Positions 671-27,729 of a stretch of 64,000 bases of DNA are shown here, in pieces. A model generated the notes under the pieces. The model made no database searches, was not told where the DNA came from, and worked only from the letters and a program-made list of their open reading frames with translations. Source of the DNA: Dimorphilus gyrociliatus (taxonomy: Eukaryota; Animalia; Annelida). Positions within the stretch are counted from its first letter, which is position 1. The number at the start of each line of letters is the position of its first letter. The stretch is from positions 4,059,689-4,123,688 of the forward strand of contig CAJFCJ010000005.1 of NCBI GenBank assembly GCA_904063045.1, read 5' to 3'. Both the position numbers and the translations under genes were made by a program.

Positions 671-709
671 CTTTCTCTCGCTTACTTACTCACTCGCTCT
701 CTTTCTTTC

Positions 710-740
<31 letters not shown>

Positions 741-767
741 TTACTTACTCATTCACTCTCTTTCTTT

Positions 768-824
<57 letters not shown>
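671..824. repeat. Pyrimidine-rich low-complexity tract: a ~60-bp imperfect tandem duplication followed by a (CT)n microsatellite
   Basis: ctttctctcgcttacttactca... occurs at ~671 and ~731; pure (CT)n runs ~776-824. Confidence 0.85.
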
Positions 825-828
<4 letters not shown>

Positions 829-861
829 CTCCCTTTTCTATCTTTTTCATATATTCTCTTA

Positions 862-2352
862 TTAACTTGGATAATAATATCCTAAACCAAACAGGATTAT
901 AAAAAGATAGATAAAGAAGAAAATTCTATCCATGACCAATGCGACAGCTCTCCACTCTTTACTAATCTTTGTGGTAACGTCCTTTTCGTAAAGTTTGTTA
1001 TTGAATGCCCTCAGAGCTCTTCTTATCTAATGAGAGAGAGAGAGGGAAAAAATAGAAAATTAGGTTAACTTCATGAAATGAATATAATTATACCTCTTTC
1101 ACTTCATTCTCCAAAGCTCCTTTTTGATGTATAGGTGATTCCATAGCAATATTACCGTTACAAGTTCCCTTATTATTATCGCAAGCTCCTGGTGGCGGTT
1201 GGAATTTGTTGTATTTCATTTCGGGGCACTTAATTCTTTTTTTTAGCTGTATATGAATAATAGAGAATTCGTTTATTAGTTGAAAGGGGGGATGGGAGAA
1301 TAATTGTACTGGGTTTTATCTTACTTTTTGTCTTCCATCAGGCGAATCAATTATGATCATTTGCTCGCCTCGTTTACCAAGACCTAATTCACCTTTCAAA
1401 CAGAGAAATCCACCGATAAATTCTACTAGAAACTTCCTCAACCAAAGGGGAACACGATTACGCTTGTCGCTTCGAAAGTATAAATTTATAATGATGACCG
1501 AGAGAAAAGTCGATAAAGTTATAAGAACGAGATTTAGGCAGAAATAGGCCCCAATTAATGGAATAGAGTGGCTGGCTGGAGGCGTACAATCAGCCAAAAT
1601 CCTTAAGAGGAGAAAGAAGGCTACAAAAATATTCATACCTAGAAAAATAATAGAATAAATGAGTAAATTTTTTGCAGTCGCTTCAATGTACTGTAACAAA
1701 CCAAGAATCATCTTTGCAGAAGATTCGGGAGGCAACCAAAATACAACTAATGTTAATAGGGAGAGAAGGACGCAGGGCAATATGAGAATGTAATTGTAAA
1801 AGGCGGCTGATCTCTTCAATTTGAAAGCGAATGTCAAATCCGGATAAGGTTCTGCGCAACAAGGGTAATATTTGACGTTTTTAACTGCAGGATGAGCCAG
1901 CAATATCCATTCGTTACTTGCCACATATTCCGTTATATCAACGGCTTCTAGACCCTCGTAAAAATCAATATTTAGCTTGAAACCGTCATAAGTCCAGCTC
2001 CCAAACTTCATTCTACATTCCTGAATATCGAAAGGGAAATATCTAATATCAATGGAGCATGTACTCTTGAAGATGCCTCTGGGAATCCACATAATATTTC
2101 CATCATGATTTACAATAGCATAAGCGTCACGATGTTCTTTGAGGCGTTCATCCGCACTGTATACAACATATCAATAAAATAGAGTGTTGTTTTGTAATAT
2201 TAATATATAGATATATAATAGAAGAAAAATTAAACAAACTAATTGTAAAGAACAATATCCGGAGTCCATATTGTATCAACAGGTACGCGAACTTTTTTGA
2301 TATTTCCAATATAATCTGCTGGATCCCATTTTAGAAAATTATCGTGCCAAGA
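862..2352 (-). CDS. nAChR alpha-type subunit, 3' cassette B (exon 3 to stop); no private signal-peptide or N-terminal exons found
   Basis: Exons 2352-2240 ([11 protein letters not shown]...WTPDIVLYN), 2156-1702 (Cys-loop [15 protein letters not shown], loop C YYPCC, M1, [11 protein letters not shown]), 1638-1325 (M2, M3), 1246-1094 and 1026-862 (M4 ...[22 protein letters not shown]). All junctions are GT-AG and phase-compatible, with no internal stops. Confidence 0.9.
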
Positions 2353-3086
2353 CTGAAAGAAATTTATGAAAAGCTCTTTTTTTAATCTATTTCTTTTAAT
2401 TTTTGTTTCTGTTTTATGTTTTTAAAAGGTGAAAAAAACACATTAAAACTAATTCCTTGTTTTTATGCTTTTATTGTATGTAGGCTTTATTTTTCATTAT
2501 CCTAATTCCCTATATCAAAAAATAGAATGAAACGCCAAACAGATGTTCATTTTTTTACTTGTTTATTTATGGTATATATATATACTAATATATATATATA
2601 TATATATTAATCTATGCATTAACATATTTACAATTTTGGAATGTTCTATTACAACCTGAGCAATGCTTATGAATTAGAACAACAATACGAGGTAATTGCT
2701 ACGAATTATTCATATTATTAGCACTTTAAACATCTTCGAATAGAAGAAAAAAGACGAAAGAGGATGATGAAACGGGAACGTCTAGAAACTTCTAAAGTTG
2801 AAGAAAGTGTGTGTGTGCCAATGTAACAATTTTATTAAAATGTTAATCATGTGTATACTTGTTCCTGATTGTATATGCAATTTACTATTTCTTCGTCTAA
2901 TGCCCTCCCTTAAAATTTTAACGGCCTATTCATTTTCGTTCAAAATTCCAATCAATTGACACTTTACTTGTTTCAGTGGGTGTCTTTGTCTTCATTAGTC
3001 TTGCCATTCTGTTGGTCTTTCCTTCGCGTATTATCTTTCTATCTGTCTCTCTCTTTCTCTTTCTTTCTTTCTATCTATCTATCTCA

Positions 3087-3118
<32 letters not shown>

Positions 3119-3295
3119 ATATTTCTCCTTCTTTCTCTCTTTCTCTCTCTCCTATTCTCTCAATAGTCTTTCACGCTTTGAGCACCTGTACAGTGACTTT
3201 TTAAGTGTCATTTTCTACACCAAAAATGTTAAACGTAAACAATCAAACGAACGAACAAATAAAAAAACAAACAGTCCAACAGACAACTGACAAAG

Positions 3296-5100
3296 TCAAC
3301 CTTTTGGAAAAATCGTTCCTAATGAAATAATGATTGTTGCTAAATACATAAAGAAAAACATCCTATCTAGGACTAGAGCAACGATTCTCCATTCCTTGAT
3401 AACTTTCGTTTGAGCATCTTTGTCATGAACTCTGCTCATATATGACTTGAGAATACGTTTTATTTCCTTTACGTCGTTCTCAATTATTGTCGTCTGCGCT
3501 AAATTGTTATGAGCTTGTCTAGTCGAACAATTTCCACGTAATGTGGTCGTTTCCTTCGATTGGTCCGGATGTGGTACTTGGAACTTATTGTATTTCAATT
3601 CTGGGCATCGAATTCGCTTTTTGTCCGACTTTTTACCTGGGTCTAAATGAATAGCGAAATCGTGTTTGCTTTGCTCCTCCGATTGAATTAGTTCTCCCCT
3701 CATGCATAGCATTCGGCCAAGATAATCGACCATAAACTGTTAAAGAATTGTTTCATTCAGTACCCTCTTTTTTTGAAAAATTCCAGTCTTCTAACTGATT
3801 TTGTAGTTGTTTTATTATTATGTTTTTAAAGGAAGCTTACTTTTTTCAACCACCTTGGTACCCTTGATTTTTTGTCTCCTCTAAAGTATAAATTGATAAC
3901 GATAACGGACAAGAATGTCGACAAAGTGATTAAGACCATGTTCAGGCAGAAATAAGCACCTGTGAAAAAGAAGAGGGAGGTCCAACAACAGGAAGATAAT
4001 TACGGGTTATATTATTAAAGCTATTGTTACTAATATTATTATTATTATTATTAATATTAATATTTTATACGCCTAATTGGTTTTAATAAGACAACCTATT
4101 AATGGGACAGAAGAGGCGGCTGGAGGTGTCGAATCGGCAAGAAGTAACAATAATAAAAAGAACGCAACGAAGATGTTCATTCCTGGTAAAATAAGAGATA
4201 AAAAAAAGGTAATATTAAATTCTGAGACTATGCCGCTTGTCTCTTTAACAAAACTAACCCAAAATCATCTTTGCCGGAGATTCGGGGGGGAGCCAGAAAA
4301 TGACAAGAGTCAACGAGGACAGTAGAACGCAGGGTAGAATTAGAATATAATTATAGAAAGCAGCGATCCGCTTAACCCTTATTATAAATGTCAAGTCGGG
4401 GTAAGGTTCATTGCAGCAAGGGTAATATTTAGTATGCTTGATGGCGGGTGCTTCTAGCAATCGCCATTCGTTCGATTTTATATAATCTCTCTGATCGACC
4501 TCCTCAATGTCGTTGTAGAATTTTAGATCGAGCTTCCACCCATCGTAAGTCCAACTACCGAATTTCAGTGTACAATTTTGAATATCGAAAGGGAAATGAG
4601 TAATATCAATTGGACAAGTTGATTTAAAAATCGATGGGGGTATCCACATAACTTCACCCAAGTAGCTTACAACCGCAAGGGCGTCTCTTTGTTCCTTTAA
4701 TCTGGTATCAGCGCTGAAAGAGACGAATAATGTTTAATTATCACCTTTCGTTTACATTATTGAATGAGAACTTACTAGTTATATAGCACAATATCGGGTG
4801 TCCATATGTTTTCAACAGGAACGCGAATTTGTTTCACGTTACCATACTCTTCTGGGTTCCATTTCAATAAAACATCCGTCCAACTCTGGAAAAAAATTAT
4901 TATTTCTATTTGTTGTATTTATAACAAATAAATTATACAGGGAAATTTATTTTGCTTAAAGCTAAAACCAAAGTGACGCCTTTAAATATCTAGAGAGACG
5001 TCTACCAAGTATTTTATTTCAGCTTAATGCTATGTTTGGTTTGGAAAATGAGTCTTTTAAGATACAAATGAGATTGGGAGTAAAAAAGTGAGACATAGCA

Positions 5101-5147
<47 letters not shown>

Positions 5148-8100
5148 AAGAGAGGGAGAAAGTGTAAGAGAAAGAGAGATAGAGACAGAGAAACTAAAAC
5201 GACCTTTAAAAACATTGCACTGTTTAACAAATACCAATTGAATTAGGTCTTAATTTAGTTTAAATAGAAAAAACCTTAATTTATTAAGGAAATAAACTAA
5301 AAACAGAATCCTCCAAAACTATTTATATTATTGTTATCATATTATTAATAATACTAAATCCAAAATTAAACTTTTTCTACGAAAATAAACATTGCGATTA
5401 TAAAAAAAAATAGAACGCCGTGTTAGAATAAAGATAAACAATGTTTCTTTTTTTTTACTTTTTACTCTTTTTTTTATATATATGTTATATCGTAATTATT
5501 TTACTAAGATTATTATAAGATTGATTAGCCCTATAGTTAGGATACGAAAGTAAACAAAGAGAGAATATTAACTAAGAGAAAAAATTTACACAGCTATCTT
5601 AATTAGACTGGTGCTTTTTTTTTTATTCTTTATTATTTTTTGTTTATATTTGTTTTTTCATTTTGAAGAAGAGATACCAAGATCGAGTAGAGAACGATGG
5701 TCTCTTATCATATAGTATTTTCTTGAGAAAGAGAAGTAGGTTCATTATCTCCTGGTTTTCTGGAATTACGAAAGTATTTATTAATTCAAGTAATAGTTTT
5801 TTTTTCTTCTACTTTTTCTTCCTTTGCTTTCTTTTATGTTTATTTTTTAAGTAGTTTATTTAAATATTCAAAAAAATTGTCAATAATCTACTTTTTGGTT
5901 TTAATTAATAAGAAATCCGTAATTCCAGAATTCTTTTGTTAGAGTATCAAATTAAGAATTTTCATATATATAAAAAGGCATAATACAAATATTTTCTTTC
6001 ATTTTCCTTTTTTTAAAAGGGAAACGTACGTATTGTATATCGAATTAATTGGGGGAAATGTTCTGCTGTATCACGTGATCAGCTATTAGAGGATCAATAA
6101 GGAGTGGTACTCGACCACAGTCTAAATATAGTGGAAAAAGAGAAGTAACTTACCGAAAGCTGCTCTTAAAAATTCCTTTGCGGGAGGCGAAAAAAAAACT
6201 CCCAGCTGAGAAAACTTTAAAAGAAAATAATCGGATGTCGTCTTCAATCGCGTACCAAAAAAAGAGGGCGATCAAGAGAGAGAGAGTGAGTGAGAGGCAG
6301 ACAGAGAGAGAGAGAGAGAGGGCGGAATTGCGTTATAGCGAGCGAGCGAGCGTTTTTTTTTAAACAGTATACAGCACAAATATATCCTTATACAATATAT
6401 ACAGCGTAAATACTGTATACATATAATTAAAAAGACCCAGATATATATATATATTCTGTATATTTACAGTATATATGCTTATTTGTTCTGTGCATATATA
6501 TAATCAACTACACACTTCTTAATTGTCTTAGTTACATATTAAAAAAAAAGACCTATTCCTTTTAATTATTCATTTTATATATGCCTCTGTTTGGTTGTTT
6601 CATACAAAGAGGGAATAGAATAGATAGAAACTACATGGTTGTAAAATGAAAGTAAAAAGAGAGGAACAGAAAAAAAACTATAAGTTTTAAATGAAAAATA
6701 ATAGAATAAAAGAAAAAAAGAAGGAATATTAAATTTGTACTCACGTATCTGCTCCAGACGTTGGTCGTTAAGACTTGATTCTTTTCATCCAAATCCAAAA
6801 TTTGGATTAGAGCCAAACCATAACTGACACGAACTGTTTCGGACGTATTAAATACTGGTCTTCCCACTTTACCGACTTCTTTGTAATCGCCGAGGACCTT
6901 CTTTATTAGCCTCTTTTCCTCGGACATCGTGACTCCTTGAGCTGTTAATGAATTGATGATATGTAACTAGTACATTCATAAAATATTCAAATATAATGAA
7001 AAATAAGTAGAATATTTGACGGCTGCTTCGTTAGCAACCAACAACGAAAATCCTAATGAGTTAAAATGACAACGAAACGCTGAAGAGTCATTTCATCATA
7101 ATTGTAAAATAATACAACACTGTACTGATGCCTTTATGGGGGAAAATGAACTCGGAAGAATCCTAATTGGAGAATTTCGCAGTTGGCGTCTCTATTGATT
7201 TATCGGAAAGATAAGCGAATACGACAGCACAATTTCCACTAGATAAAACTACATAGACGCCTAGTGAATTTATCGAGGATGCCCTTTTTTTTGCGTTCAT
7301 CTATTTCCAATTTTGTTGTCGTTTCTCAACTTTTCACTTCTATATTTTTTCTCTTTCAGTAGGCAAATTGATTACCTAGACCGATTGATTATACTTTATT
7401 AGACGAGAAAATCGAAGAGAATCGGTTTTTCCCCCCATACCCTCCCTTCTTTTGCACTGATTGGGATTGATTTATGCAGGCATTCGTCTTATGAGTACTG
7501 CGCTCGAAGCGCCGTCTATAGAATCGATATTTTTTCGGAGGGGAAAAAATTGCATCAAAGTCTCGTAAATAATTTAGTGATAGAATTCGAGGGAAAAAAG
7601 TAACGAAATAGAATAAGTTTAGGGCTAAAAAGGTTTTTTGAACTACTAAGTTCTTCTTTCCGAAGCTATTCGTTTGCTCTTAAATAAAATAACAACTACA
7701 CGTAACGTCCTTACCTATGGCCACTTGTTTAGGTAACGCTTAAGTAGATTTACTAATTAGGGAGAGGGGGTAAAAGTATTGGCGATGGAAGAGGCGAAGG
7801 GGTGTGAGAGAAAACGAAGGAGTATTGCTAAGAGGAAGGAATAAACCCTTAGAGCGACAGGAAAAAATTGATATAAGAAGAAATGTGAAAGAGAAAATCA
7901 TAAAGAGAACGAGGGAGTGAGAGAGAGATTGACGAGAATCGATTATGATGGACAATTGATTACTAAAAACTAGTGGATGATGAGTCGTTAATCGAAAAAA
8001 TTTTACGAAGTGAATCGTCTCTGGTCGAAATTTTACCTTGACACGTCACACATGGCTGATTATTTAAATCTTATAATTTACATAATTAGTCGTTTCGAGG

Positions 8101-8482
8101 GTAAAATGTATCCTTTAGAGATAAATTGGATATACGAGTATCTATAATTGATACACGTGATATATATATATATATATACTGTATATGTATGTACATATAA
8201 TGTATATATTGTATAACATATATAATACCGGAAAGCGATAAAGCGTCTCCCTGTTCTATCTCCCTCAAAAAAGATTTTGATAAGCAATTTTTAATTTCCT
8301 TCTTCCTTTTTACACTTTCTATATATTTTGTATAGATTTATATTTTGCTTACGTTCTTTCCTCGAGTCGAATCGATCATCTTCCGCTCCGAATTCATACT
8401 TTGAGGGATAATTCGTATCTTCACTTATCACTGCAGTAACAACGTCTAAAATCAACAACACGCACAGTCTTATCCGCGACAT
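3296..8482 (-). CDS. nAChR alpha-type subunit, full-length form with 3' cassette A (putative anion-selective class)
   Basis: Exons 8482-8353 (signal-peptide-like [20 protein letters not shown]), 6941-6745 (EEKRL...GRPV...[22 protein letters not shown]), 4885-4776, 4713-4259 (Cys-loop [31 protein letters not shown]), 4182-4096, 3959-3841 and 3736-3296. Splice phases match throughout. Confidence 0.93.
5104..5141. repeat. (GA)n microsatellite in an nAChR intron
   Basis: Uninterrupted GA dinucleotide run. Confidence 0.95.
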
Positions 8483-8565
8483 TTCTCTTCATAGTTTCTT
8501 CTCCATCTTCCCCTTCCCTGCTGTTTTTTGTACAGTCAATAGACGCCTGACTACGTCAGTTTCAA

Positions 8566-8634
8566 TGCCCCCTAGTGACGCCCTTTCGCTTTACCGATAT
8601 TATAATTTATAAGAAATTTTCACACTAGGTGGCC
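8566..8634. promoter_or_regulatory. Pair of oppositely oriented CTCF-like motifs just upstream of nAChR exon 1
   Basis: TGCCCCCTAGTGA (8566-8578, reverse-strand match) and ACACTAGGTGGCC (8622-8634) each differ at one core position from the consensus CCASYAGRKGGC. Confidence 0.45.
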
Positions 8635-8829
8635 CAGAGTACGAGTACTGTTTGAACGGTTTAAAACATGAAAATACAAAAACTGCTAAGGTTGGAGGTA
8701 AACAAGCTTTTTAGAAATCAATAGAAAATTTTATTCCTAGAGTAATTTCTCTGAATAAGTCATCCAACCGTCAGTCTTTATACACGATACAGTAAATCAA
8801 CCAACTAAGCTTTCCTAATTTCCTTTTGC

Positions 8830-8833
<4 letters not shown>

Positions 8834-8877
<44 letters not shown>
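8834..8877. repeat. (TA)n microsatellite
   Basis: Uninterrupted TA run. Confidence 0.95.
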
Positions 8878-8880
<3 letters not shown>

Positions 8881-10171
8881 TTATATACATGTACATACAT
8901 ATATACGTATATTGTATATAATACATTACTTTTCCTCCTTTGGTGTATAATGTATGTTAAAGGGCTAGATGATATGCATCTATATACTGTATATATATAT
9001 AAAAATATATACTATATATATATACAGTCTATAACCCTATTGTACATATAATATTATAAATGTACTTTATATAGAATATATATCTTTTCGCAAACTCTAC
9101 ACAAACAATACGTTAACAATACGTTGCACTCATTTCAGCAACATCCTTTTAGATATATACGCCCTTTATTTTCCTTTTCTTACTTTTTTTCTTTTCTTTT
9201 TCTATATAAACCAAAAAGGAAAAAAAATATTCTTTCTCTCTTTTCTTTTCTTTTCTCTAGTTTTCTTTCTTTCGTACTTTTTTCTTGTTTTCAAACTCAG
9301 CGACGCCTCCGTTATTTTTTCTTTAGATATCCGATATCATCTTTCTTGATCCGTTAACGATAGAATAATTAAAAAATCATTTGGAATGGTATAAAACGTT
9401 TCTATTATTTGATTGGGAGATAAAGAGAAGCGAATTTTTCCTATTTTATAGCATGAACTTTAGCTTTGCAATCAAATTGTCATTTTTATTATGTTTACAA
9501 TATATAAATATCAAGACAAAAGAATATCAAGATATCATAACCTGCTCCCTGGCCTTGCAACATTTATTCACCCATATAACGTGCGATTCCCCACTATCGC
9601 AATGCCCTATGGAAATTTTACTGATTGAGCCTTTCTACTATACTATATGTACTGGCCAGTTTCGTCGGCTATTGTCCGTGGTAATCAATAACTGTTCTTC
9701 TTTTTTATCTTTAACAGGAAGTAGCCACTTTGGGTAATGTTTATCTTGATTAATCGATAGAAATTTTCAACATTTGTGATATCGACAAAAAAAAATTATC
9801 GAAGAAAGAGACACCTAGATACAATTTTAAATATGATCTTTGACGAGAGTATACACAAATGTATGAATCTTCATATTTTCTGTAATATTTCTCTCTTACT
9901 CTCTATCTTCTGCCCTTCCTATTCCATCTTCCCTTTTCTTCTTGCCTGAACTTTACGTTAGTTACTTAACATACTTTCTTCCTTACTAAACCATCCCTTT
10001 AAATTAGAGGGAGGGTAGGAGTACTCTTCTAGTCCCATGACATTAAAGGTCGAAAGCACTCGTTTAGCTCGTCTTCTAACCTAATGACAACTCTTTGTAG
10101 GATATGATAGCTAGAAGGCTAGATAGTAGAGAGTTTGTAGTTTAATTTCTTTCTTTCAACTTTCCTACAAG

Positions 10172-10184
10172 CCACTAGATGGCC
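10172..10184 (+). promoter_or_regulatory. CTCF-like motif
   Basis: CCACTAGATGGCC matches the core consensus CCASYAGRKGGC. Confidence 0.45.
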
Positions 10185-12321
10185 TCCTCCACTAAGTTTA
10201 GCCTCCTACGTAAGATGCGCATCGTTGTTTCTTGTTTACTCAAACCGTGCTACATTAGTTCGATAGATTAAGAAATGTCGACGCCGGTAGCGATATCTGT
10301 GATAGGTTTTACCCCAAGGCATTATAGAGAGCAACTAAAAGGAAGGGAGTTAAGGAGGAAGCCGAGGATAGACGGGAAGAACGAAAGTGTTTAGGAAGGG
10401 TGAGAAGCACTGACGAATGAGAGACGCCACCTAACGAGAAAAATAAAAGGCAAAAAAAAAGTTGAAAAATATGATAGAATGATGATGTTGGAAAAGGAAG
10501 AAGAGAAAAAATAAATAGAGATTGACATTAACAATAAGAAGAATAGAAAAGGGTATGAGCAATTGGAACTTTTCAAAATAATTACTTTTAGTGAATAGAG
10601 GTTTTTACGGGTTTAAATAAACGTAAGTGTCTCATTTGTAAGAATAGAGATTATTTGACCAAAAGCTTAATAAACACATAACGTACAGTAAAAGGTGAAA
10701 AGAATTGGATAGTAAAAGGACAAATTTTTTTAACTAGGCAAACGAATATCTGGTCTTGAGTGCTTATTTCAAAGCAGGTGTAAATTTAATGAAAAATTGT
10801 GACGTCATATAATTATACTAAGATTGAAATCCTCTGTTGGATGTTATTTGTCGCTCAGATTGTAATATCCGCCCCTTGTAGCCTTTACTCTAAACAAATA
10901 TACAAAATCGGACAGAACGAGTACAATAAACATAAAGTATAATGGGAGAAGTGTGAAAACTGGGAAATGTTGCGCATTCTTGTGCAAAAATAGGCAATAT
11001 ACGATGATTTACAGTTCATGGGCCAATAGCCCTCCAATATCTTATATAATCTGCCATTAATTGACGCATTAGATTAAATATGGCAATGGTAAAAGAGTAG
11101 CAGTTGGGCTGACGTTCTATTTATTTTCCCATTTATAAATCGGCTTATGTCCAGCAACCGACTATAATTAACATGTAAATCACGAAAATTCTGGTCATCG
11201 GTTTAGGAGGCGCTGTCAATGAATGGTGGAAAACAGAAAGGACAGAGAAAGAGAGAGAGAGAGAATGAAGGCGGAGAAGTATGGGAGGAATAAGGAATTT
11301 TTCAGAAAACTGCAAATCAGATGATTGAGAAAGAGAGAGAGAGAGAGGAGTAGAAGAAAATATTAAAGATAACAAAATTTAGGCAACACTTTTGAAATTG
11401 TCTATAATGGACTAGGTGGATTTTTTGTTAAAAAAATCTAATTACACTTAATTGCTTACAAGGAGAAAGAGGAGTGTGGGAAAATAGAGGGAAGATTTTT
11501 TTTTGTTATCCTCTTATAGAACAATAACGGTAAATGGATGAATAATTATTTAAATTTGGGCCAAATACTAAAAAATTCGGCCATGTTGAATAACGAACGT
11601 AAACAATTACCGACTTGTTGGATTCCTATATGTTTATCAGATAAGCAAAGGGTCGGGTAAAGTCAGTCAATTATTTCTACTGAAAAGAAAGTGCTGTTTT
11701 ATATTGCTCTCACTACAGCAATATTTTTTATCTGCATTTTCCATCAACAAACAAGAAAAAAGACTATTCGATCAGTAAGGCAATACAATTAAATTTTCCT
11801 TTTCCCTATCGTCAATCCGGTATAAATTGAAATTCTATACTTTCATAGCTTATATTTCCATTTGCTATAAGGCCAGGGGCGTTTCTTTACTTCGCAAACG
11901 TAACATAATCAATTAAAGCCGACTAGAAAGGTCTACAAAAATCAAATTCTCCTACCTGGAAGTGAACCAATCAAAACAAGCAGATTGAGCCAACAACTCG
12001 CCTGCTTGGTCATCTTCTTCTATTACAACTGAACTTTTTATTATTCTTTATTTTTTATATAAAGTATAGTCTTGTATAAACAATTCACGTAGAGTCTGGG
12101 TCCAGTCTAGTCCAGTATGAAACTTTCGTCTATTTCTCTCATAGAAACCAAATGCGAAAAAAGAGGGGTGGGGGGTGGGGGTAAACTAAACAGAACTCAG
12201 TCACCGTCTCTCCAAGTTTTAGGCACCTTCCTGCTATAGTAATAATTTCATTAAAATATAACCATCTAAACAGAAACATGTAAACAGAAACATATATATA
12301 GTATATATATAGATACATATA

Positions 12322-12325
<4 letters not shown>

Positions 12326-12367
<42 letters not shown>
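12326..12367. repeat. (TA)n microsatellite
   Basis: Uninterrupted TA run. Confidence 0.95.
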
Positions 12368-12370
<3 letters not shown>

Positions 12371-12685
12371 GATATATACCGGTTTAATACATACAAAGAG
12401 CAGAGTTATTGATATTAAAATAAATAATCCAACCCAATAAAGAAAACACGTTCACTTTGATTTTGCTTGGCCTATGTAGTTACTTGTAATAAGCTGTCAA
12501 TCTATAGGATGAAACTTGAAAAAGTTTCGTAAAGGAGTCAGTAAAATCATTTTCGGTTGAGAACTTTTCTAGTACTTTCCAAAGTGGAGTATTAAGTGGC
12601 GAAGAGGAATTGTCTAGAGGGCGTCGTTGCAGAGGCTATTGGATGTTTTTCTTGCTGACGTTTCAATTAGAATGCTTTCGAATGT

Positions 12686-12910
12686 TTTTTAGCTGTTGAA
12701 AATTGATAAAGAAAAAATAATTAAACATTTTCTTAGGAGGCTCGAGTAGAAGAAAACTCGGTTTCAGACTAAGAATGTGTTTGCAATTAGGAAACTAGTT
12801 GCACTGTTGCATGACTTTTCATTCTCCAATTCAACTGTATTGGCTTTTCCTGTTTCATTATGCATTATATACTCCCCTTAATCCAATACACTTTTATCGA
12901 ATGTAGAGAG
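12686..12910. repeat. Degenerate direct repeat, copy 1 (possible decayed retroelement fragment)
   Basis: Shares collinear blocks with 15803-16050: gaaaattgataa(a)gaaaaaataattaaacattt, gaatgtgtttg(c/t)aatt and ttaatccaatac(a/t)ctt. Confidence 0.55.
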
Positions 12911-15802
12911 ATGGAGAGATGGAACGAGGAAAAGGCAGGAATATATTCCTTTTCCTCAAAAATGAAAACCAGCTTTAAAAGCTTTTTCAGAAATTCGATA
13001 TTCTAAACTATTGGACGCACTAGCTCTGAAAAACTAAACTTTTTTCTTTGCTTTCTCTCTATTTTCTATCTCAATCTCAATCCCCTTAGTATAATCTCTC
13101 TTTTAATCTTATCTTTTCACTCTTCTCTTTCTACTTCTGAAAAAGTTCATTACTCCTAATCAATTTTTCGATACTCTATTTTCAACTTTTACAGTCTTTA
13201 CACTGCGATTTAAATAGATTATTACCCTGCAGCAGACTCCCAACTTTGCAACAGATTGCCATTTTACTGTTACCCATACAATATAGACCTAAACTTCTTT
13301 TTCGGTAATAGTCTAACAAAGTAATCCTACCAAAAAGCGGAAAGAGCTAAAAGACGATTATCCAGCTTCGTCCGTAATTTTATTGTCCAATCTGCAACCG
13401 TACAATACTCTCAGTCAGTTGCTGTCTAGACAAGAAATTTGCCCCAGTGAAGACTAGAAAAGTCTGCAATCTCGATATTTCTCTAGGCCCACGTAACCTA
13501 ATGAATTTTATTGACGACTAGACCGTAAATGAATTGGTATTTAATCTACAATTTCCTTAAACTTAGTTATTTCCGCGTCCAGCATCATTTACATATTTTC
13601 ACAGGTTCATCGCTCTGCGGTGAGCACTGCCATCTATTGCTTGATATGTTTGATATTATATCTTTATACCGATAAGAAAACTACGTAGCCTAAAACTATA
13701 TTTTTCTATAAAAAAGAGAGTCCGTGGGTGGTTGAGAATCACAAAATATAAATAAAAAGACTAAAATGAAACGTGAAAAGAAGCTGATGTTTCTTTTTCA
13801 GAGTGAAATAGTCTAGCAGAAGCTGCAAACGATACACATAAAAACTATTTATAAGTTAACTATATCAAACTATCGAACAACCAAAGCACGTGTGAATAAT
13901 TTTGCACTTCCATGCATATAAATCTATTTTTTAACGATAACTGAAATAAATTATTAGAAGGTGTATACATAGAATGTTACAATCTTCCCTCTATCTCTCT
14001 CTCTCTCACACTTTCCTCCGTTCTCTATATCTCTTTATCATACAGAAGAATTTTTCCTCGCATTCTATCAAGAACTAGTAGTAAGGAAGCTAAAGAGAAA
14101 TTCGAGACAACTTAAGCAACATGCATCCAAAGAATTAGATAAGAAACGAATTATTAATTGAAAATAAGGATTTATTTCATAATTTCACAAAATAGGAATG
14201 ATGAAGAATGATAATAAGAAAGACAGAATGATAGAAATAAGGAAGAAAACTGTTAAAAGAAATACTTGAGTTTGATATCGTTACCTCCTATTAACTATTT
14301 TGCAGTTGGCATCAAGACGATCAGATATATACTGCATATTATATATGATATTAATTGCATGGAAGAAACATTATACTGCATTTATATCTATAAATGCTAT
14401 AGGATATATCATTTTATGTAACTTTTTCTCGTATTTTATACAATTATTTTAAGGTTAATTAGGGAATCTTTAAGCTTTCTTTTTTTGTACTGGAATTTTC
14501 CAGAGGCATTGGAACTGTAGTACAAGATACTTATAAGTCTTTGCGGATAACTTACACTACTGGAAGATCTAGTTTATTCTCTATGTAAAAGTGTTGAAAG
14601 TAATCTTCAAACGTTTGCTTCATTTGCCTTTTGAAGACGGAGGCAAAGAGAGAGAGAGACGGAGAGAGATTTTATAGCTGATAGATCACTTAATTTTCAT
14701 TTTTATCTTGAATTGTTAAGTTCTTATAAAAGAATTCTTTCTTCCTAATCTATTCTTACGAGTTTCTGACTTCCCTTTCCGTTTTCTCTATCCCTTTTTT
14801 TTGCTGATTGAATCTCTCTAATCAAAGTCAATTATAAAAATGATTGATTACCCGGTTGATTTAATAGATATTCTACTATAATATTGTTTAATTAATATTG
14901 ATATTATAAATTAAATCATTTTCATATTTTGCCGTATAGTTAGTTGAATTAAAGGATATAACGTAAAAGTTTATCTTTCTCTACCCTATCAAATGACCTT
15001 AACCTTTTACATTAAACTGGTATATGCTGTAATTTGTAGTTCTGATAAATTACTTAATTTTTTACCTTTCCTCTAACTTCTTTTCTCGTTGAAGATTTTC
15101 TTTACGCTTTTGAAACTATTAGTTAGCTTCACGGAAAGTAGACTAGGGACATTTTTCGCACCTGATCCATTTATATACAGTATAGTATTTATATTCTAAA
15201 TTTTCAGAGTAAGACCTCCATCTCAAAGAGAAAAGAACATAGAACATTTTCACCTTTAAATTACAAACTAATTTAGCGTTTTAAGTGTTTGTCCTTTTAC
15301 TTTACATTCAACAAATCAGTCAGTCTATTCCATATACAATTTGGATTTTATTATTGTTAATCACGTGGGCAAAAATGTCAAATGCTAAAACGGTACAAAT
15401 GTTCTAAATTATTTTCTCTCTTTCGTCTATTGAACAATAAAAAAATGTTAAGATAAGGAAAAGCGAGCAAACAAGGGAAAAAGGCGACTAGTTTTAAAAA
15501 GTTTAGTTGCATTTGGGAGAATTTATCAACGTTGACCATTTGGGTACATTCAATCATTAGGCAAATAACCTAAAATCCCAATAGTAAGGGATTAAATAAA
15601 TTTATGCAATAGAAAGGTTGAAAAGTAGCTAAAGGAAAATATTCTCCTCTTGTCTTTTTGTCTTTAGCGCACGCAAACATACTCTCTGTCTTTCTCTCTC
15701 TCTCTCCCCCCCCCCCTCTCTCTCTCTCCTCTCACGCTGCCGTTGCTATCAATTTAACAATATTTTTAATTAGAATATACTTCTTCCTGTAAAGTATTTT
15801 CT

Positions 15803-16050
15803 TTTACTGCTAGAAAATTGATAAGAAAAAATAATTAAACATTTAGATAGGTAATGGAAAATTGCAGTAGAAAAATAAAATTACAGTTTTTAGACGATGA
15901 ATGTGTTTGTAATTTTAGTTTTTCGGCATGTTAGTTTATCTTCCATTTCTTTGAGTTTCCTTCTACTATTCAACTATCAAAGCATTCAACTACCACTGTT
16001 TTATTGGGTATTGTATACCACTTTAATCCAATACTCTTTCTTCGAATAGG
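15803..16050. repeat. Degenerate direct repeat, copy 2
   Basis: Same three collinear blocks as 12686-12910, in the same orientation. Confidence 0.55.
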
Positions 16051-17452: not shown

Positions 17453-18847
17453 TTAGTTTAACTTGTAAAATTCTTGGTATTTTCGCATCTCTCTATCGAA
17501 TCTTGCAGTTAAATCTGATTTGAAAGGAAGTAAAGCATCATCCAATTCAAAATATTCAAGCTCCTCGCCGCAAGTTTTCCACTTTCGGTAGTGAGCTATA
17601 TGAGCCAAATGGAGCTTTACTTTTGGGAACTCTTTCTGACTCTTTTCGTTATACCATACACAAAAATGGTTGCCAATATATGGACAATTTGAAGTAGTTA
17701 TAAACGATTTGGGGTTATCGAGAACTGAAGCAGATGATATATTTTGCCTATATCTATGCTGAAAAATAAAATATTTATCGTCTACTTTCATATTACAACT
17801 GACATCGTATCTTAATTTGCAAAGTTCCACTTGAACTAATCCTGGTTTTTCATAGCTCTGAATGAGCTCGTGAAAACTTGAAAAATGTGACGAATTCATG
17901 ATAATATGCTCATCGAAATCGAGTGATAAAACATATTTTGAGCGAAGATGATTCATAATAAAACATTCATTTAGAGCCATTGGCATAAACGCCTTTATTA
18001 AATAAGGCTTACGGCTAGGCTTTAATTTATTCTGCCTTGAATCAATTGAGACCTTGAAAGGTAATTCCATTTTATTAATAAAGACAACATTTTGCTGTTC
18101 GTAATACTTGAAAACTTTGAGAACATTGTCAGGAACTCTCCAAATAGTTATATCAATTGTTCTAACACCGAAGAATCTCAGAAATTCGAACCATTCAATT
18201 AGTTGTTTTGTATCGAAAGAACCATATGTAATTGGTACGCATACTGATATAACTTCATTACCTGGTTGAGGTTTTTCAATAGTGAGTTCTGCCACTTCCT
18301 TCTCCTTTCGAATTTTTATTCGGTTTGGTACTATTTGAACATTTATTGGGCAATGAATAACGTATTCTTGGAGGCCCGTAAAAGGATACCTATACGCTTC
18401 GTTAGTCCACAAGACCACCGCCTCAACCTCCTTCGCATTCCCATACTTACAAAAGATGGATCCTATAGACTTCACCCTCCTCACATTACTAAGAACATAG
18501 AGCGTTACGCAAGGGCTTTGCCAATTTTCAAATTTTCTACTATCGTATATTGCTCTGTGAACGTATAAACTGGTACCTTGAGAATAGAATATATGCCATT
18601 CAGCAGACTTTAATGGAAGAGAGCTGCGATTACTCGACTTTTCGTGAAGTTTAGGCAAGATATATGTTCTCTGAGAGAACCAGTAGTCCGATTGAAGAAC
18701 AAAATAAAGAAACAATAAAAGTAAAACAGTAATTAGCCTGATTATTGTAAATCTAGGAAAATTCATTGTACATAAACAGATTCTGAACGTAGTCGATCTG
18801 AAACATGTGTCACATCTTAATTCTCTATATCTGAAACGTGTGTACAT
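17453..18847 (-). CDS. Glycosyltransferase family 92 (DUF23) type II membrane protein, intronless, copy 1
   Basis: 464-aa ORF with an N-terminal TM (likely start MNFPRF at 18766), ISVCVPITYG, LIEWFEF, ALNEC, LSLDFDEHI (DxD), NPKSF and AHIAHYR. Confidence 0.85.
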   Translation of the reverse strand: MYTRFRYRELRCDTCFRSTTFRICLCTMNFPRFTIIRLITVLLLLFLYFVLQSDYWFSQRTYILPKLHEKSSNRSSLPLKSAEWHIFYSQGTSLYVHRAIYDSRKFENWQSPCVTLYVLSNVRRVKSIGSIFCKYGNAKEVEAVVLWTNEAYRYPFTGLQEYVIHCPINVQIVPNRIKIRKEKEVAELTIEKPQPGNEVISVCVPITYGSFDTKQLIEWFEFLRFFGVRTIDITIWRVPDNVLKVFKYYEQQNVVFINKMELPFKVSIDSRQNKLKPSRKPYLIKAFMPMALNECFIMNHLRSKYVLSLDFDEHIIMNSSHFSSFHELIQSYEKPGLVQVELCKLRYDVSCNMKVDDKYFIFQHRYRQNISSASVLDNPKSFITTSNCPYIGNHFCVWYNEKSQKEFPKVKLHLAHIAHYRKWKTCGEELEYFELDDALLPFKSDLTARFDREMRKYQEFYKLN

Positions 18848-19343: not shown

Positions 19344-20696
19344 TCAATTTTTGTTAATTAAAAGTCCCAGCTTTTCTTTTGCTTTATTAAAATTTTCAAC
19401 TAAAAATGGTTCAATCTCCGTTAAAGTTGTGTCCATTGCGTATCTGGCAACCTTTTTTAAACAATAAACATGTTTTCTAAAATGAGCTATAAATGCATGA
19501 CTTGTTGGCACTCTTAAATAATGCTTTTGAAAACGTTCATTTCTCCACATACAGTAATGATTTCCTATAAACGGACAGTTACTTGTACTCATAAATGACT
19601 TTGGATTGTCATTATATGTCATTACTGAAAAGTCTTCTCTAAATTTATGAGAGATTATAAAATGAGGACTTGATAGTTTGCGTCCGCAAGTGACGTCAAA
19701 TTTTATCTTTCCGGTTTGTACTTGAACAGTTGATGTTTTTTTGTTACCAACATAACTGTCGACAAGTTCAATGAAACTTGGAAAAACCGATATATTTAGG
19801 TAGATAAATTCATCGAAATCTAGTGATAGAATATATCTAGATCTTAATGCATTCATCGTTAAGCATTCGTGCAAAGCAATAGGCACAAATGCTTTTAAAA
19901 ATTTTGGTTTGCTACTAGGAAGACGCTCGTTATCCGGCTCGTAAAGGTCTATTTTGAATGGAATTTCCATCTTATTCACCAGGAGAAAGCCTTGTTTTTC
20001 ATAATAGTCAAAAATTTGGCTAACACTACTTGGTACTTCCCACATAGCAATTTCAACCATACTAACACCGAAAAATTTCAGATATTCAAACCATTCAATA
20101 AGCATTCCCGCATCGAATGAACCATAGACTAGTGGTACGCAAACGGTTATAGCCTCATTACCAGGATAGGGTCTCTCAATTTTTAAAATTGCAGAATCAA
20201 CACCTCGACTAACAGTAATAAATGTGGGTATAGGATAAATATCATCAACTGGACATTGAATTGCAAACTCTTGCAAATTAGTAAGCTTATAACGGAAACC
20301 GGAAACAGGAAATATAACTTTAGCGGTTCTGCTGACAGTTTTGTTGGAAATGGTGTACGAACATATGATTGTTCCTAAATCCGAATGTCTTTGAGTATTA
20401 CTTAAAACCATTAAGGTAACAGCCGGTGTTTGCCATCGTGAAAAATTTCTTGAATCATATATAGCTCTATGAATGTAAATAACATTGCTGTGATTCCTCC
20501 AAATGTGCCATTCGCCGCTGTCTTTCGGTTCGATCTTGTATTCATAGCCTTCATGAGATTCAAAGTTGAAGTAGGTTAACGCTTGATTTCCATATTTTGT
20601 ATATCTTTCTAGAGCAGTAAATTTCATACAAATAATTATCAGAAATAGCAGAGTCAAAACTAAGATTATTCTATGACTTAGTCTCCTAACCGGCAT
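19344..20696 (-). CDS. Glycosyltransferase family 92 (DUF23) type II membrane protein, intronless, copy 2
   Basis: 450-aa ORF with an N-terminal TM, ITVCVPLVYG, LIEWFEY, ALHEC, LSLDFDEFI, NPKSF and AFIAHFR; a collinear paralog of 17453-18847. Confidence 0.85.
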   Translation of the reverse strand: MPVRRLSHRIILVLTLLFLIIICMKFTALERYTKYGNQALTYFNFESHEGYEYKIEPKDSGEWHIWRNHSNVIYIHRAIYDSRNFSRWQTPAVTLMVLSNTQRHSDLGTIICSYTISNKTVSRTAKVIFPVSGFRYKLTNLQEFAIQCPVDDIYPIPTFITVSRGVDSAILKIERPYPGNEAITVCVPLVYGSFDAGMLIEWFEYLKFFGVSMVEIAMWEVPSSVSQIFDYYEKQGFLLVNKMEIPFKIDLYEPDNERLPSSKPKFLKAFVPIALHECLTMNALRSRYILSLDFDEFIYLNISVFPSFIELVDSYVGNKKTSTVQVQTGKIKFDVTCGRKLSSPHFIISHKFREDFSVMTYNDNPKSFMSTSNCPFIGNHYCMWRNERFQKHYLRVPTSHAFIAHFRKHVYCLKKVARYAMDTTLTEIEPFLVENFNKAKEKLGLLINKN

Positions 20697-25931: not shown

Positions 25932-26587
25932 ATGGCCGACATGATTGTGTTTATTGAATTTCGTCTATTAAAATTACATAACATTATTTTCTTTATAGTC
26001 CTCCAATTAGTAAAGAAAACAAAGATATACTGCAGAAAATGATAATCGACACAATTGCAATGCTTTGTCGATCACATTTTGAGAAAGAACCCTATTTTAG
26101 GCTAGATGGCGTGGTGGGACTAACGCTATCCTCCGATGACGTTGTCCTTATCAATATGCATAAGGAAGTAGAAAATGAAACCGCTTTAATTAGCCATGTT
26201 CGAAAGAGGCCATTGGATGAGAAAGAATTAAACTCTGAAGACATTAAGCGAAGAAAGACGAAGAGGGAACAAGAAGACGATTCAGATTGGGTTGATCTAA
26301 CTGATCATGATATTGAAGTTAAGGAGGAAGTTGACGAACCAAATTATGAAACATTGCCCGATAATACAGCCCGACTAGAAGATGATAATAATCGACAAGA
26401 GGACCACTCTCAGGATGACCGGCAGACAGATACACCTCCAAAGAACAATTGGCCTGGCTTGGCAGGTAGTTCGACATCTTCTGCAGAATTTTGTGCTCCT
26501 GTAGTTGGTAAGATAGTTGCAACACCATTGTCAACAATATCTACTCTTTCAACAACCGGAGTAACATCAGCCGGTTCAACAAAGCAG
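25932..26587 (+). CDS. Common 5' exons of a C2H2 zinc-finger locus: a helical N-terminal module plus an acidic and Ser/Thr-rich linker
   Basis: Exon 25932-25948 and exon 25999-26587: MADMIVPPISKENKDILQKMIIDTIAMLCRSHFEKEPYFRLDGVVGLTLSSDDVVLINMHKEV...GSTKQ, ending at a phase-0 donor CAG|gttcgc. Confidence 0.75.
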
Positions 26588-27660
26588 GTTCGCATATATT
26601 TACTTCGCATTTTCTTGCCTTTAACCCACCCTTCGCCCCTAAAATTTAGCACTATACCAAAGTAATAATTACGAAAGAAAGTCTTAAATAGAATATCTGA
26701 GAGTAAATAAAGAAAATTACGCTTCCTTCGTTTATTCTATATTTAATCTTAATTTAGAAGATTCATACGTAATCTATAGGAAGTAAAGCGTAGTTTTCAA
26801 TCTTTCTTTTCTATTTTCATTTTCCTTATTTGCTTTTATTTACTTCTTTTTCTACTTCTGATTTTCTCATTCTTCTTCTGCTTCTTTTCCTTTCTCTATT
26901 TCCTTCTAGTCAAGTCTAAGTTTTAATTTATTCAACATAAACAAACCGTATTATTGTTATTATTATTATTGTTATTTTCTGTCGTAAATCTTTCTCTCCC
27001 TAGATAAATTATTCATAAGATACGCATGTTAATGAACAAATAGTCACCTGTTAAAAGAAGAAGAAAAAGTAAAACATATAAAATATTCAAAGCACAAAAA
27101 TCAAGTAAAAACAGCCACAACAGCAAGAAAAGATATATAATATCAGAAAGAGATGTGATCTATTCTAGTTATAATTAAATCTTTTAATCTTAACATCATT
27201 TAAATAACTAATTAGCGAAGGAAAAATGACAAAAAATAGGACGTTACCTTTTTGCTTAATCTGTGAAAATGAGTCAAATACGTTATCAAATGTATACAAC
27301 CCTTGTATTATAATTATTTTTATAACTTATTTTTTCTTTTATATTTTTTAGTGATAGGTTTATTAGTTTGTTATTTTATTCACTTATTCGTTCATTCACT
27401 CAGTCATTATTTTTATATTAAGTAGTAAAAGGGAAGAAGAAATATTTGGGAGTTGATGACCCATCAATTTTTCAACCAGTACATTTTCACTTTCGTTTTT
27501 ACTCATTTAATATTAGTAATATTTTTTAAAATATGTTCAACTTATAGTGTACAGTATAGAATGTATTAAGAAATGTATTACTTTTATAATCGTTCTACTG
27601 TAAAAGTGCACATCTGCACATTTATTACAGTTTATCCATAATTTTCTTTCTATCGTTTCT

Positions 27661-27672
27661 CTCTCCCTCTCT

Positions 27673-27729
<57 letters not shown>

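What the first reader, a model, noticed from the sequence alone, without database searches (positions are those of the whole stretch)
862..8482. Two complete nAChR bodies share one set of 5' exons (partial tandem duplication read by alternative splicing)
Seen in sequence: cassette A (4885-3296) and cassette B (2352-862) each contain everything from exon 3 to the stop with intact frames. Only one signal-peptide exon (8482-8353) and one exon 2 (6941-6745) were found, and 2353-3295 contains no EEKRL/GRPV/LDEKNQ-like exon. Exon 2 ends in phase 0, and both cassettes open with phase-0 acceptors encoding SW. Inference: one promoter yields two diverged alpha subunits by choosing the acceptor at 4885 or 2352. 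Shared intron phases (2 after exon 3, 1 at MILG) would also allow A/B chimeras that mix ligand-binding and pore regions. B's intact frame despite clear protein divergence argues against a pseudogene.
Basis: partly seen in the sequence, partly recalled or inferred. Interest (0 to 1): 0.78.

Follow-up and report, generated by a model that had tools for sequence, protein, structure and literature searches.

The report
One gene, two acetylcholine-receptor bodies
In the tiny marine worm Dimorphilus gyrociliatus, one promoter and two shared first exons are spliced to either of two complete, diverged nicotinic-type receptor bodies lying in tandem, so one gene makes two different channel subunits, and three other annelid genomes show the same layout.

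Summary
On the minus strand, exon 1 (8482-8353) and exon 2 (6941-6745) are followed by two full receptor bodies. Body A is 4885-3296 and body B is 2352-862. Each has an intact frame, canonical splice sites and its own stop. No second exon-1 or exon-2 copy exists anywhere in the 64-kb window.

Assembled RNA contigs show both joints, 6745->4885 and 6745->2352, in independent studies, and every internal intron of A and B is spliced as modelled. No A/B chimera was seen.

A and B are 65% identical in protein. Synonymous sites are saturated while pN is 0.25, so the duplication is old and constrained.

Both belong to the lophotrochozoan nicotinic clade that carries Pro-Ala in place of the cation-type Glu before M2, the anion-channel type. 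B has lost that Pro and carries an Arg at pore position 16'.

Lamellibrachia, Paralvinella and Helobdella also have a same-strand downstream body. It starts at a phase-0 exon-3 acceptor with no exon 2 of its own. The arrangement is therefore probably ancient, but there is no RNA proof in those species.

It is a new variant of a known architecture (avr-14, lola). Interest is moderate.

The parts
8353..8482 (-). Shared exon 1: start codon and signal peptide, ends in phase 1
   Evidence: Reading of the sequence. Overhangs at 6941 in X2 and X3 read the last 30 bases of this exon, which shows the E1-E2 splice. It has no second copy in the window.
6745..6941 (-). Shared exon 2: N-terminal helix, strands beta1-beta2 and the loop-D Trp (..NVWSRY), ends in phase 0
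   Evidence: Pfam Neur_chan_LBD positions 1-54. It is unique in the window. Its donor at 6745 joins both 4885 and 2352.
3296..4885 (-). Body A: exons A3 4885-4776, A4 4713-4259, A5 4182-4096, A6 3959-3841, A7 3736-3296 (stop TGA). It holds loops A, B and C with the YxCC motif, the Cys-loop, M1-M4 and the ESPAK pre-M2 motif.
   Evidence: All four internal introns are spliced in X3, and partly in X1 and X2. One 1447-base X3 contig runs 3'UTR-A7-A6-A5-A4-A3 plus 30 bases of E2. Pfam; best solved-structure matches are human alpha3, alpha4 and alpha7.
2545..3295 (-). 3'UTR of body A, with a (GA)n tract and AATAAA at 2567-2562; the end point is approximate
   Evidence: X3 contigs cover 3155-3295 and 2620-3029 at a depth like that of body A. 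Depth is about 5 in the 2350-2549 bin. AATAAA position.
862..2352 (-). Body B: exons B3 2352-2240, B4 2156-1702, B5 1638-1325, B6 1246-1094, B7 1026-862 (stop TAA). It has the same domains as A, with ESSAK before M2 and Arg at M2 16' (LLLRIL).
   Evidence: One 1289-base X3 contig runs 3'UTR-B7-B6-B5-B4-B3 plus 30 bases of E2. X1 has the 2352/6745 and 1026/1094 joints. Pfam; motifs.
2353..6744 (-). The 4392-base intron removed to make isoform B. It contains all of body A and A's poly(A) signal.
   Evidence: The joint 2352-6745 skips 4392 bases with CT..AC ends on the plus strand, which is GT..AG on the minus strand, in X3 and X1.

Best explanation
This is a single transcription unit of Dimorphilus gyrociliatus with one promoter, one signal-peptide exon and one exon 2. 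Exon 2 encodes the N-terminal helix, strands beta1-beta2 and loop D.

The exon-2 donor at 6745 is spliced to one of two acceptors.
- Splicing to 4885 gives subunit A, which ends at its own stop (3296) and poly(A) site (about 2545).
- Splicing to 2352 removes a 4.4-kb intron that holds the whole of body A and its poly(A) site. This gives subunit B.

About four fifths of the mature protein is swapped as one block:
- binding loops A, B, C, E and F
- the Cys-loop
- M1-M4
- the cytoplasmic loop

Both products are alpha-type (YxCC) nicotinic-family subunits of the lophotrochozoan Pro-Ala clade, which is presumed anion-selective. B differs at pore-relevant sites: Pro -2' is replaced by Ser, and Leu 16' by Arg.

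Shown here: the exon structure, the uniqueness of E1 and E2, both splice joints, and the colinearity of each body.

Inferred:
- that full molecules run E1-E2-B
- that the regulated step is 3' splice-site choice coupled to bypass of A's poly(A) site
- anion selectivity
- that the same sharing operates in the other annelids that have the same gene layout
For: 1. Structure. The exon model, phases and GT..AG sites are.

2. Splice joints. The joints 6745->4885 and 6745->2352 are both in X3, 6745->2352 is also in X1, and X2 has an overhang reading the start of A3. Each body is one colinear spliced contig ending exactly 30 bases into E2. That is what a k=31 assembly graph gives at a branch point.

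3. E1-E2 link. Overhangs at 6941 show it.

4. No private 5' exon for B.
- tblastn and the exon-2 profile are blank in the spacer, the introns and upstream.
- Depth is about 5 in 2350-2549, and no other donor joins 2352.
- The last 31 bases of E2 are unique in the window.

5. Constraint.
- A versus B: 65% identity, pN 0.25, pS 0.80.
- In the related lineage X1, 11 synonymous against 2 non-synonymous changes were placed.
- That lineage differs by about 1% in exons and about 4.7% in A's 3'UTR.

6. Family. The motif is PPESPAK, against SGEK in outgroups. The Pro-Ala motif marks the nicotinic chloride channels of Lymnaea and Schistosoma (PMC4055736).

7. Conservation of layout.
- In L003 (Lamellibrachia), L001 (Paralvinella) and L006 (Helobdella) a complete upstream gene is followed on the same strand by a second body.
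- That second body starts at a phase-0 acceptor one codon before the conserved Trp.
- The spacers hold no exon-2-like sequence.
- The B-type pore signature is shared by the window's B and the downstream bodies of Lamellibrachia and Paralvinella.

8. Contrast within the genome. The paralogues DgyrCDS7081 and DgyrCDS7085 each have their own exon 2.

9. Trans-splicing. D. gyrociliatus is reported to lack trans-splicing and operons (PMC7854359).
Against: - The RNA evidence is assembled contigs, not reads. Each joint carries only 30 bases of E2, so no single molecule was seen to run E1-E2-B3...B7.
- The library type of X3 is not on record. I infer RNA from the spliced contigs and the very uneven depth.
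- X1 and X2 are low-depth metatranscriptomes of a near relative or strain.
- The 5' end of B transcripts was not mapped. A private non-coding first exon outside the 6-kb stretch laid would have shown only as an overhang at 2352. None was listed, but five overhangs were not shown.
- Orthology of the window's B with the other downstream bodies is not resolved by the tree. B pairs with Helobdella's downstream body (90/86) but sits nearer to A plus Dgyr7085 (84/97) than to the Lamellibrachia and Paralvinella downstream bodies. One clade of all downstream bodies is merely not rejected (AU p = 0.196).
- There is no RNA evidence for sharing in the other annelids.
- I could not see how the public annotation models this locus.
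Confidence: 0.87

Rival explanations
1. B is a separate gene with its own promoter and 5' exons that lie outside what was examined. The E2-B3 joint would then be only occasional read-through or conjoined-gene splicing from the upstream gene.
For: Contigs cannot give the share of B transcripts that carry E2. The 5' ends were not mapped. Five overhangs were not shown.
Against: - No exon-1 or exon-2 homologue exists anywhere else in 64 kb.
- The only donor seen at acceptor 2352 is 6745, and it is seen in two studies.
- The B contig ends exactly at the graph branch inside E2.
- B3 begins with an acceptor in phase 0 and has no start codon or signal peptide of its own.
- The same headless layout occurs in three other annelids.
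Confidence: 0.05
2. B is a decaying partial duplicate. It would be spliced and transcribed only because it sits downstream of a live gene, and would make no functional subunit.
For: It lacks its own 5' exons. It has lost the Pro of the Pro-Ala motif. There is no functional test.
Against: - The frame is intact over five exons, and the Cys-loop, YxCC, loop A-C aromatics and M1-M4 are all kept.
- pN is 0.25 against a saturated pS.
- The B exons are nearly invariant in the related lineages X1 and X2, while A's 3'UTR differs by about 4.7%.
- The B-type pore signature is conserved in Lamellibrachia, Paralvinella and Intoshia.
Confidence: 0.04
3. The headless downstream bodies arose independently in Dimorphilus and in the other annelids by recurrent partial tandem duplication. 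The shared-exon arrangement would then be young in each lineage rather than ancestral.
For: - The free tree places the window's B nearer to A plus Dgyr7085 than to the Lamellibrachia and Paralvinella downstream bodies.
- Tandem duplication is rife in lophotrochozoan nAChR genes (PMC6896357).
- The downstream bodies of the other annelids have an intron inside exon 4 that the window's B lacks.
Against: - A and B have saturated synonymous sites.
- B pairs with Helobdella's downstream body at 90/86.
- The Ser/Ala -2' and Arg 16' signature is shared by the window's B and the downstream bodies of Lamellibrachia and Paralvinella, and is absent from all upstream bodies.
- A single clade of downstream bodies is not rejected (p = 0.196).
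- D. gyrociliatus is reported to have lost introns (PMC7854359).
Confidence: 0.3

Closest known systems
Nematode avr-14 (GluCl alpha3A/3B) of C. elegans and Haemonchus
   Same: A Cys-loop receptor gene whose shared 5' exons are spliced to either of two alternative sets of 3' exons, giving two subunits from one promoter (PMC3144221).
   Different: In avr-14 the whole ligand-binding domain is shared and only the channel and intracellular part is swapped. Here only the signal peptide, N-terminal helix and beta1-beta2 are shared, and nearly the whole receptor is swapped, including the principal ACh-binding face. avr-14 also belongs to a different family (glutamate-gated, GABA/Gly-like).
Insect nAChR alpha6/alpha4 mutually exclusive exons
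   Same: Tandem exon duplication inside a nicotinic subunit gene, read out by alternative splicing (PMC1919356, listed).
   Different: Insects substitute single exons (3a/3b, 8a/b/c) and all isoforms rejoin common downstream exons and one 3' end. Here five-exon bodies run to separate stops and 3' ends.
Drosophila lola / mod(mdg4) / fruitless type genes, and the zinc-finger gene at 25932-31650 of this same window
   Same: Common 5' exons plus an array of alternative 3' terminal exon sets, each with its own stop.
   Different: Those are transcription factors with short alternative zinc-finger ends. Here the alternatives are whole ion-channel bodies of about 400 residues. My knowledge of the fly genes is from memory. 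The zinc-finger gene in this window is an earlier scan note (s1-080734) that I did not re-test.
Human CHRFAM7A (partial duplication of CHRNA7 exons 5-10)
   Same: A partial duplicate of the 3' body of a nicotinic subunit gene that lacks the parental 5' exons. A solved chain of it appears among the matches.
   Different: CHRFAM7A acquired unrelated FAM7A 5' exons and its own promoter at a distant site, and it lacks part of the binding domain. Here the duplicate reuses the parental exons 1-2 in cis and yields a complete subunit.
Nicotinic-type acetylcholine-gated chloride channels of Lymnaea and Schistosoma (SmACC-1/2)
   Same: Same protein clade. The pre-M2 Glu is replaced by Pro-Ala (PPESPAK). 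Database relatives carry the names 'acetylcholine-gated chloride channel-1' and 'nAChR subunit type B'.
   Different: No shared-exon architecture has been reported for those genes in the papers I read. B has Ser-Ala instead of Pro-Ala and an Arg at 16'. Ion selectivity is untested here.

Membership tests
Cys-loop (pentameric) nicotinic receptor subunit, alpha type | A ligand-binding domain plus a four-helix channel domain | tested here: met
   Pfam PF02931 and PF02932 hit E2, A4, A7, B4 and B5. The best solved-structure matches are human alpha3, alpha4 and alpha7, with E down to 5e-45.
Cys-loop (pentameric) nicotinic receptor subunit, alpha type | A Cys-loop (C-x13-C) and vicinal cysteines in loop C (YxCC) | tested here: met
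   The Cys-loop is [15 protein letters not shown] in A and [15 protein letters not shown] in B. Both have KYYPCC.
Nicotinic-type acetylcholine-gated chloride channels (Lymnaea / SmACC clade) | A Pro-Ala motif in place of the cation-type Glu at the M1-M2 border | tested here: inconclusive
   A has ESPAK, so the feature is met. B has ESSAK: the Glu is absent and the Ala is kept, but the Pro is replaced by Ser. Outgroup nAChRs have SGEK. The definition of the motif is from PMC4055736.
Nicotinic-type acetylcholine-gated chloride channels (Lymnaea / SmACC clade) | ACh-gated chloride conductance | not testable with these tools
   This needs heterologous expression and reversal-potential measurements.
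Genes with shared 5' exons and alternative 3' bodies (avr-14 / lola architecture) | One donor spliced in cis to two or more alternative downstream exon sets, each with its own stop | tested here: met
   The joints 6745->4885 and 6745->2352 are seen, and each body is a separate colinear spliced contig. The stops are at 3296 and 862.
Mutually exclusive tandem-exon substitution (insect alpha6 type) | The alternative exons rejoin common downstream exons | tested here: not met
   No joint runs from body A into body B, and each body runs to its own stop and 3'UTR.
Operon with spliced-leader trans-splicing | The downstream gene receives a trans-spliced leader at its first acceptor | tested here: not met
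   The B3 acceptor is joined in cis to exon 2. The species is reported to lack trans-splicing and operons (PMC7854359).

The most novel reading that the evidence does not exclude
The locus is an ancient, annelid-wide 'two receptors in one gene' unit. A partial tandem duplication would have happened before the radiation of the main annelid lineages (dinophilids, siboglinids, alvinellids, leeches, perhaps orthonectids). It would have left a headless second body that has depended ever since on the exon 1-2 and promoter of its upstream neighbour.

Splice choice would then switch the pore chemistry of an acetylcholine-gated anion channel (Pro -2' and Leu 16' in A, against Ser/Ala -2' and Arg 16' in B). 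Alternatively it would fix co-expression of two partner subunits.
Probability: 0.45. Interest if true: 0.7.

Novelty: new variant of a known kind. Interest (0 to 1): 0.55.

Why it matters
- **Scale of the swap.** Alternative splicing of nicotinic subunits is known to swap single exons. Here it swaps almost the whole receptor, so one promoter encodes two subunits that differ in their ACh-binding face, gate and pore lining.
- **Gene models in other genomes.** It explains why several lophotrochozoan models of this clade are 'partial' and begin exactly at exon 3. Examples are Lamellibrachia P0001 and Intoshia P0015. The Paralvinella model P0002 begins later still, at the exon-4 equivalent, behind a spurious N-terminus. 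Such bodies should not be counted as fragments or pseudogenes in gene-family censuses.
- **A natural experiment.** If the layout is ancestral to annelids, it shows how long a gene can persist without a promoter of its own. It is also a tractable system in a compact genome for studying the coupling of 3' splice-site choice to poly(A)-site bypass.
- **Channel biology.** The A/B pore differences offer a ready-made test of determinants of anion permeation in nicotinic-type chloride channels. This receptor class is of interest as an anthelmintic target.

Tried and rejected
- **Exon-4-only tree** (151 columns). It was unresolved, so I replaced it with a tree on whole bodies.
- **All-against-all search for shared exact 30-mers** among the fetched proteins, meant to find annotated isoform pairs with identical N-termini. 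The conserved M1-M3 segments swamped it, so it was uninformative.
- **Owenia.** P0122 and P0126 have different N-termini, so they are separate genes. The DNA of the Owenia locus was withheld.
- **Intoshia.** The B-type gene lies 1.4 kb from a contig end, so its upstream neighbour cannot be seen.
- **Lottia.** The two neighbouring genes are convergent, so they do not have this layout.
- **Dimorphilus paralogues.** DgyrCDS7081 and DgyrCDS7085 each have their own exon 2, so the arrangement is not general in this genome.
- **Public annotation of this locus.** No protein of the three word searches matches the window's A or B at 100%, so I cannot say how the locus is annotated.
- **Big representative search, structure prediction and fold search.** Not used, because family and function class were clear from Pfam and from the search against solved-structure (PDB) sequences.
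- Every search used single exons by reference, database proteins, or the genomic ORF 1316-2092. That ORF is B4, a stop-free 63-base intron and B5 read straight through.
- **How the body tree was built.** Exon pieces were added as separate fragments to an alignment of database proteins. They were merged only as alignment rows inside the script.
- **Rejected readings:** an assembly artefact or retrocopies in DNA (depth runs from 0 to more than 1000 across the locus, and two runs on record as RNA show the same joints), and trans-splicing.


Full report
**What is in the sequence**

- E1 (8482-8353) has an ATG and a hydrophobic signal peptide and ends in phase 1.
- E2 (6941-6745) ends in phase 0 after ..NVWSRY.
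- Body A has five exons: 4885-4776, 4713-4259, 4182-4096, 3959-3841 and 3736-3296.
- Body B has five exons: 2352-2240, 2156-1702, 1638-1325, 1246-1094 and 1026-862.
- All boundaries are yAG|..|GT.
- Both bodies open in phase 0 with Ser-Trp.
- They share phase 2 after exon 3 and phase 1 at ..MILG.
- B has lost two of A's introns and has two that A lacks.

Pfam finds the ligand-binding and channel domains in both bodies and in E2. The best solved relatives are human alpha3, alpha4 and alpha7. Both bodies keep the Cys-loop, the loop A-C aromatics and the YxCC pair.

**Only one set of 5' exons**

- tblastn of the E1 and E2 peptides against the whole 64-kb window returns only the exons themselves. 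The next best hits have E about 0.9.
- I built a profile of exon 2 from 17 homologues. It scores 52-125 bits on four positive controls. It scores no more than 4.5 bits in the A-B spacer, in introns 1 and 2, and in 8483-16000.
- The last 31 bases of E2 are unique in the window.

**RNA evidence**

The look-up of sequencing runs gave three runs:
- two metatranscriptomes, X1 (marine) and X2 (coral)
- X3, from 'organism A', holding 77% of the sampled words

I laid all three on 950-6949, which is 6000 letters.

The library type of X3 is not on record. Its contigs are spliced and its depth runs from 0 to more than 1000 across the locus, so I take it for RNA.

- Every internal intron of A and of B is removed with GT..AG ends.
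- One 1447-base X3 contig is colinear through A's 3'UTR, A7, A6, A5, A4 and A3, plus 30 bases of E2.
- One 1289-base X3 contig is colinear through B's 3'UTR, B7, B6, B5, B4 and B3, plus 30 bases of E2. The arithmetic of the pieces fits exactly.
- Thirty bases is k-1 of the assembly graph. Both contigs therefore stop where the graph branches, as expected if one exon 2 feeds two acceptors.
- The joint 6745->2352 also stands in X1, in a 150-base contig that is 97.5% like the window.
- X2 carries a 17-base overhang at 6745 that reads the start of A3.
- Overhangs at 6941 in X2 and X3 read the end of E1.
- No other donor joins 2352, and no A/B chimeric joint is listed.
- A's 3'UTR is covered down to about 2620, and an AATAAA lies at 2567.
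- The 2350-2549 bin is almost empty.

The limits are these. The evidence is contigs, not reads, so it shows presence, not abundance, and not whole molecules.

**Selection**

- Compared exon by exon, A and B are 65% identical over 373 codons. pS is 0.80 (saturated) and pN is 0.25.
- Of the differences between the window and the X1 lineage that could be placed in codons, 11 are synonymous and 2 are not.
- X1 differs by about 1% in exons and by 18 substitutions plus 3 indels in 387 bases of A's 3'UTR.

**What the proteins are**

At the M1-M2 border both bodies, and their whole clade, read PPES-P-A-K. Outgroup nicotinic subunits and the human alpha3/alpha4 chains read S-G-E-K.

Replacement of that Glu by Pro-Ala is the stated hallmark of the nicotinic-type chloride channels of Lymnaea and Schistosoma (PMC4055736). 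Relatives in the databases carry such names.

B departs from A at two pore-relevant sites: Ser for Pro at -2', and Arg for Leu at 16' (LLLRIL against LLLLLL).

The shared exon 2 carries the loop-D Trp. Loops A, B, C, E and F, the Cys-loop, M1-M4 and the cytoplasmic loop are all body-specific.

**Organism**

A window ORF (19347-20696, minus strand) is encoded exactly on contig CAJFCJ010000005.1 of assembly GCA_904063045.1. The same assembly holds proteins named Dimorphilus gyrociliatus. This confirms the lead from the earlier scan note s1-080734.

The genome paper reports short introns, some intron loss, and no trans-splicing or operons (PMC7854359).

**Other genomes**

A word search with the genomic ORF 1316-2092 found annelid and mollusc relatives. 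Several models begin exactly at the exon-3 equivalent: Lamellibrachia P0001, Helobdella P0004 and Lottia P0010, and later Intoshia P0015.

I fetched the loci and mapped them with the window's exon peptides.

| Species (locus) | Upstream gene ends | Same-strand second body starts |
|---|---|---|
| Lamellibrachia (L003) | 7317 | 10470 |
| Paralvinella (L001) | 2873 | 9073 |
| Helobdella (L006) | about 20000 | about 25351 |

- Each downstream body opens with a phase-0 yAG acceptor one codon before the conserved Trp.
- None of the spacers holds an exon-2-like sequence.
- The Ser/Ala -2' plus Arg 16' signature is shared by the window's B and the Lamellibrachia and Paralvinella downstream bodies. 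It is absent from all upstream bodies.
- The two neighbouring Lottia genes are convergent.
- The Dimorphilus paralogues DgyrCDS7081 and DgyrCDS7085 each have their own exon 2.

The tree on whole bodies has 403 columns.
- All upstream and downstream bodies fall in one clade (94/98).
- The window's A pairs with Dgyr7085 (100/99).
- The window's B pairs with Helobdella's downstream body (90/86).
- The Lamellibrachia and Paralvinella downstream bodies group with P0121 and P0123 (98/99).
- The tree does not unite all downstream bodies.
- An AU test does not reject uniting them (p = 0.196).

I therefore rate common ancestry of the arrangement as probable, at roughly 0.6, and not as shown.

**Mechanism**

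The shown part is alternative use of two 3' splice sites by one donor. For isoform B this removes a 4392-base intron that contains body A and its poly(A) site.

The rest is inferred.
- Commitment is probably a co-transcriptional competition. Pairing of 6745 with 4885, followed by cleavage near 2545, gives A.
- Failure or repression of that pairing, together with read-through of A's poly(A) site, lets 2352 be used.
- Whether this is a cell-type switch or a way to co-express two partner subunits cannot be told from contigs.

**Comparison with what is known**

- The architecture is that of avr-14, where a common ligand-binding domain is joined to alternative channel halves (PMC3144221). It is also that of lola-type genes. 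Here the split lies much further upstream, so that nearly complete receptors alternate.
- Insect alpha6-type exon substitution differs, because those isoforms rejoin common exons.
- The survey of lophotrochozoan nAChR expansions describes tandem arrays and odd domain combinations, but no shared exons (PMC6896357).
- My paper searches found no report of this arrangement. The library is limited to open papers.

**Compliance and gaps**

The searches were made exon by exon, by reference.
- I could not see the public annotation of this locus.
- I have no raw-read or long-read evidence.

Noticed in passing
window 5203-6774, plus strand (intron 5736-6019): X3 contigs at 5203-5736 and 6020-6774 are joined by a skip of 284 bases with GT..AG ends on the PLUS strand. 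The acceptor is preceded by a pyrimidine tract. This suggests a spliced antisense transcript inside intron 2 that runs over exon 2. It has no ORF of note.
   Followed up: partly
L005 37054-37137 and 36920-37003 (DgyrCDS7085); L003 4284-4367 and 5074-5157 (Lamellibrachia upstream gene): Both genes carry two tandem copies of the 87-base M2 (pore) exon. These are likely mutually exclusive exons. The public DgyrCDS7085 protein (P0125) contains both copies in series, which is probably a model error. The window's body A has only one M2 exon.
   Followed up: partly
L007 10001-11563: A metagenome contig (ENA) carries an intronless 520-residue gene of the B-like group (Lys at 16'), complete with signal peptide and the exon-2 part. 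It looks like a retrocopy of a spliced mRNA.
   Followed up: no
window 3030-3190 and 700-840 (minus strand), also 5100-5170: Both bodies are followed by a long (GA)n tract, starting roughly 20 bases (B) to 110 bases (A) after the stop codon, inside or next to the 3'UTR. A (CT)n tract lies in intron 2 upstream of A3. This may be part of the duplicated unit or mere microsatellite richness.
   Followed up: no
window 17453-18847 and 19344-20696, minus strand: Two tandem single-exon ORFs of 464 and 450 residues. The second hits Pfam Glyco_transf_92, and a further family member lies next to it in the assembly.
   Followed up: no
window 35281-36393 (minus) and 37099-38190 (plus): Two divergently oriented intronless ORFs of 370 and 363 residues that look like seven-helix receptors by eye. 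Not scanned.
   Followed up: no
P0040 (Logan contig, 156 residues): A transcript-derived protein is 96% identical to exon A4. It probably comes from the same near relative of D. gyrociliatus that appears in the marine metatranscriptome X1.
   Followed up: no
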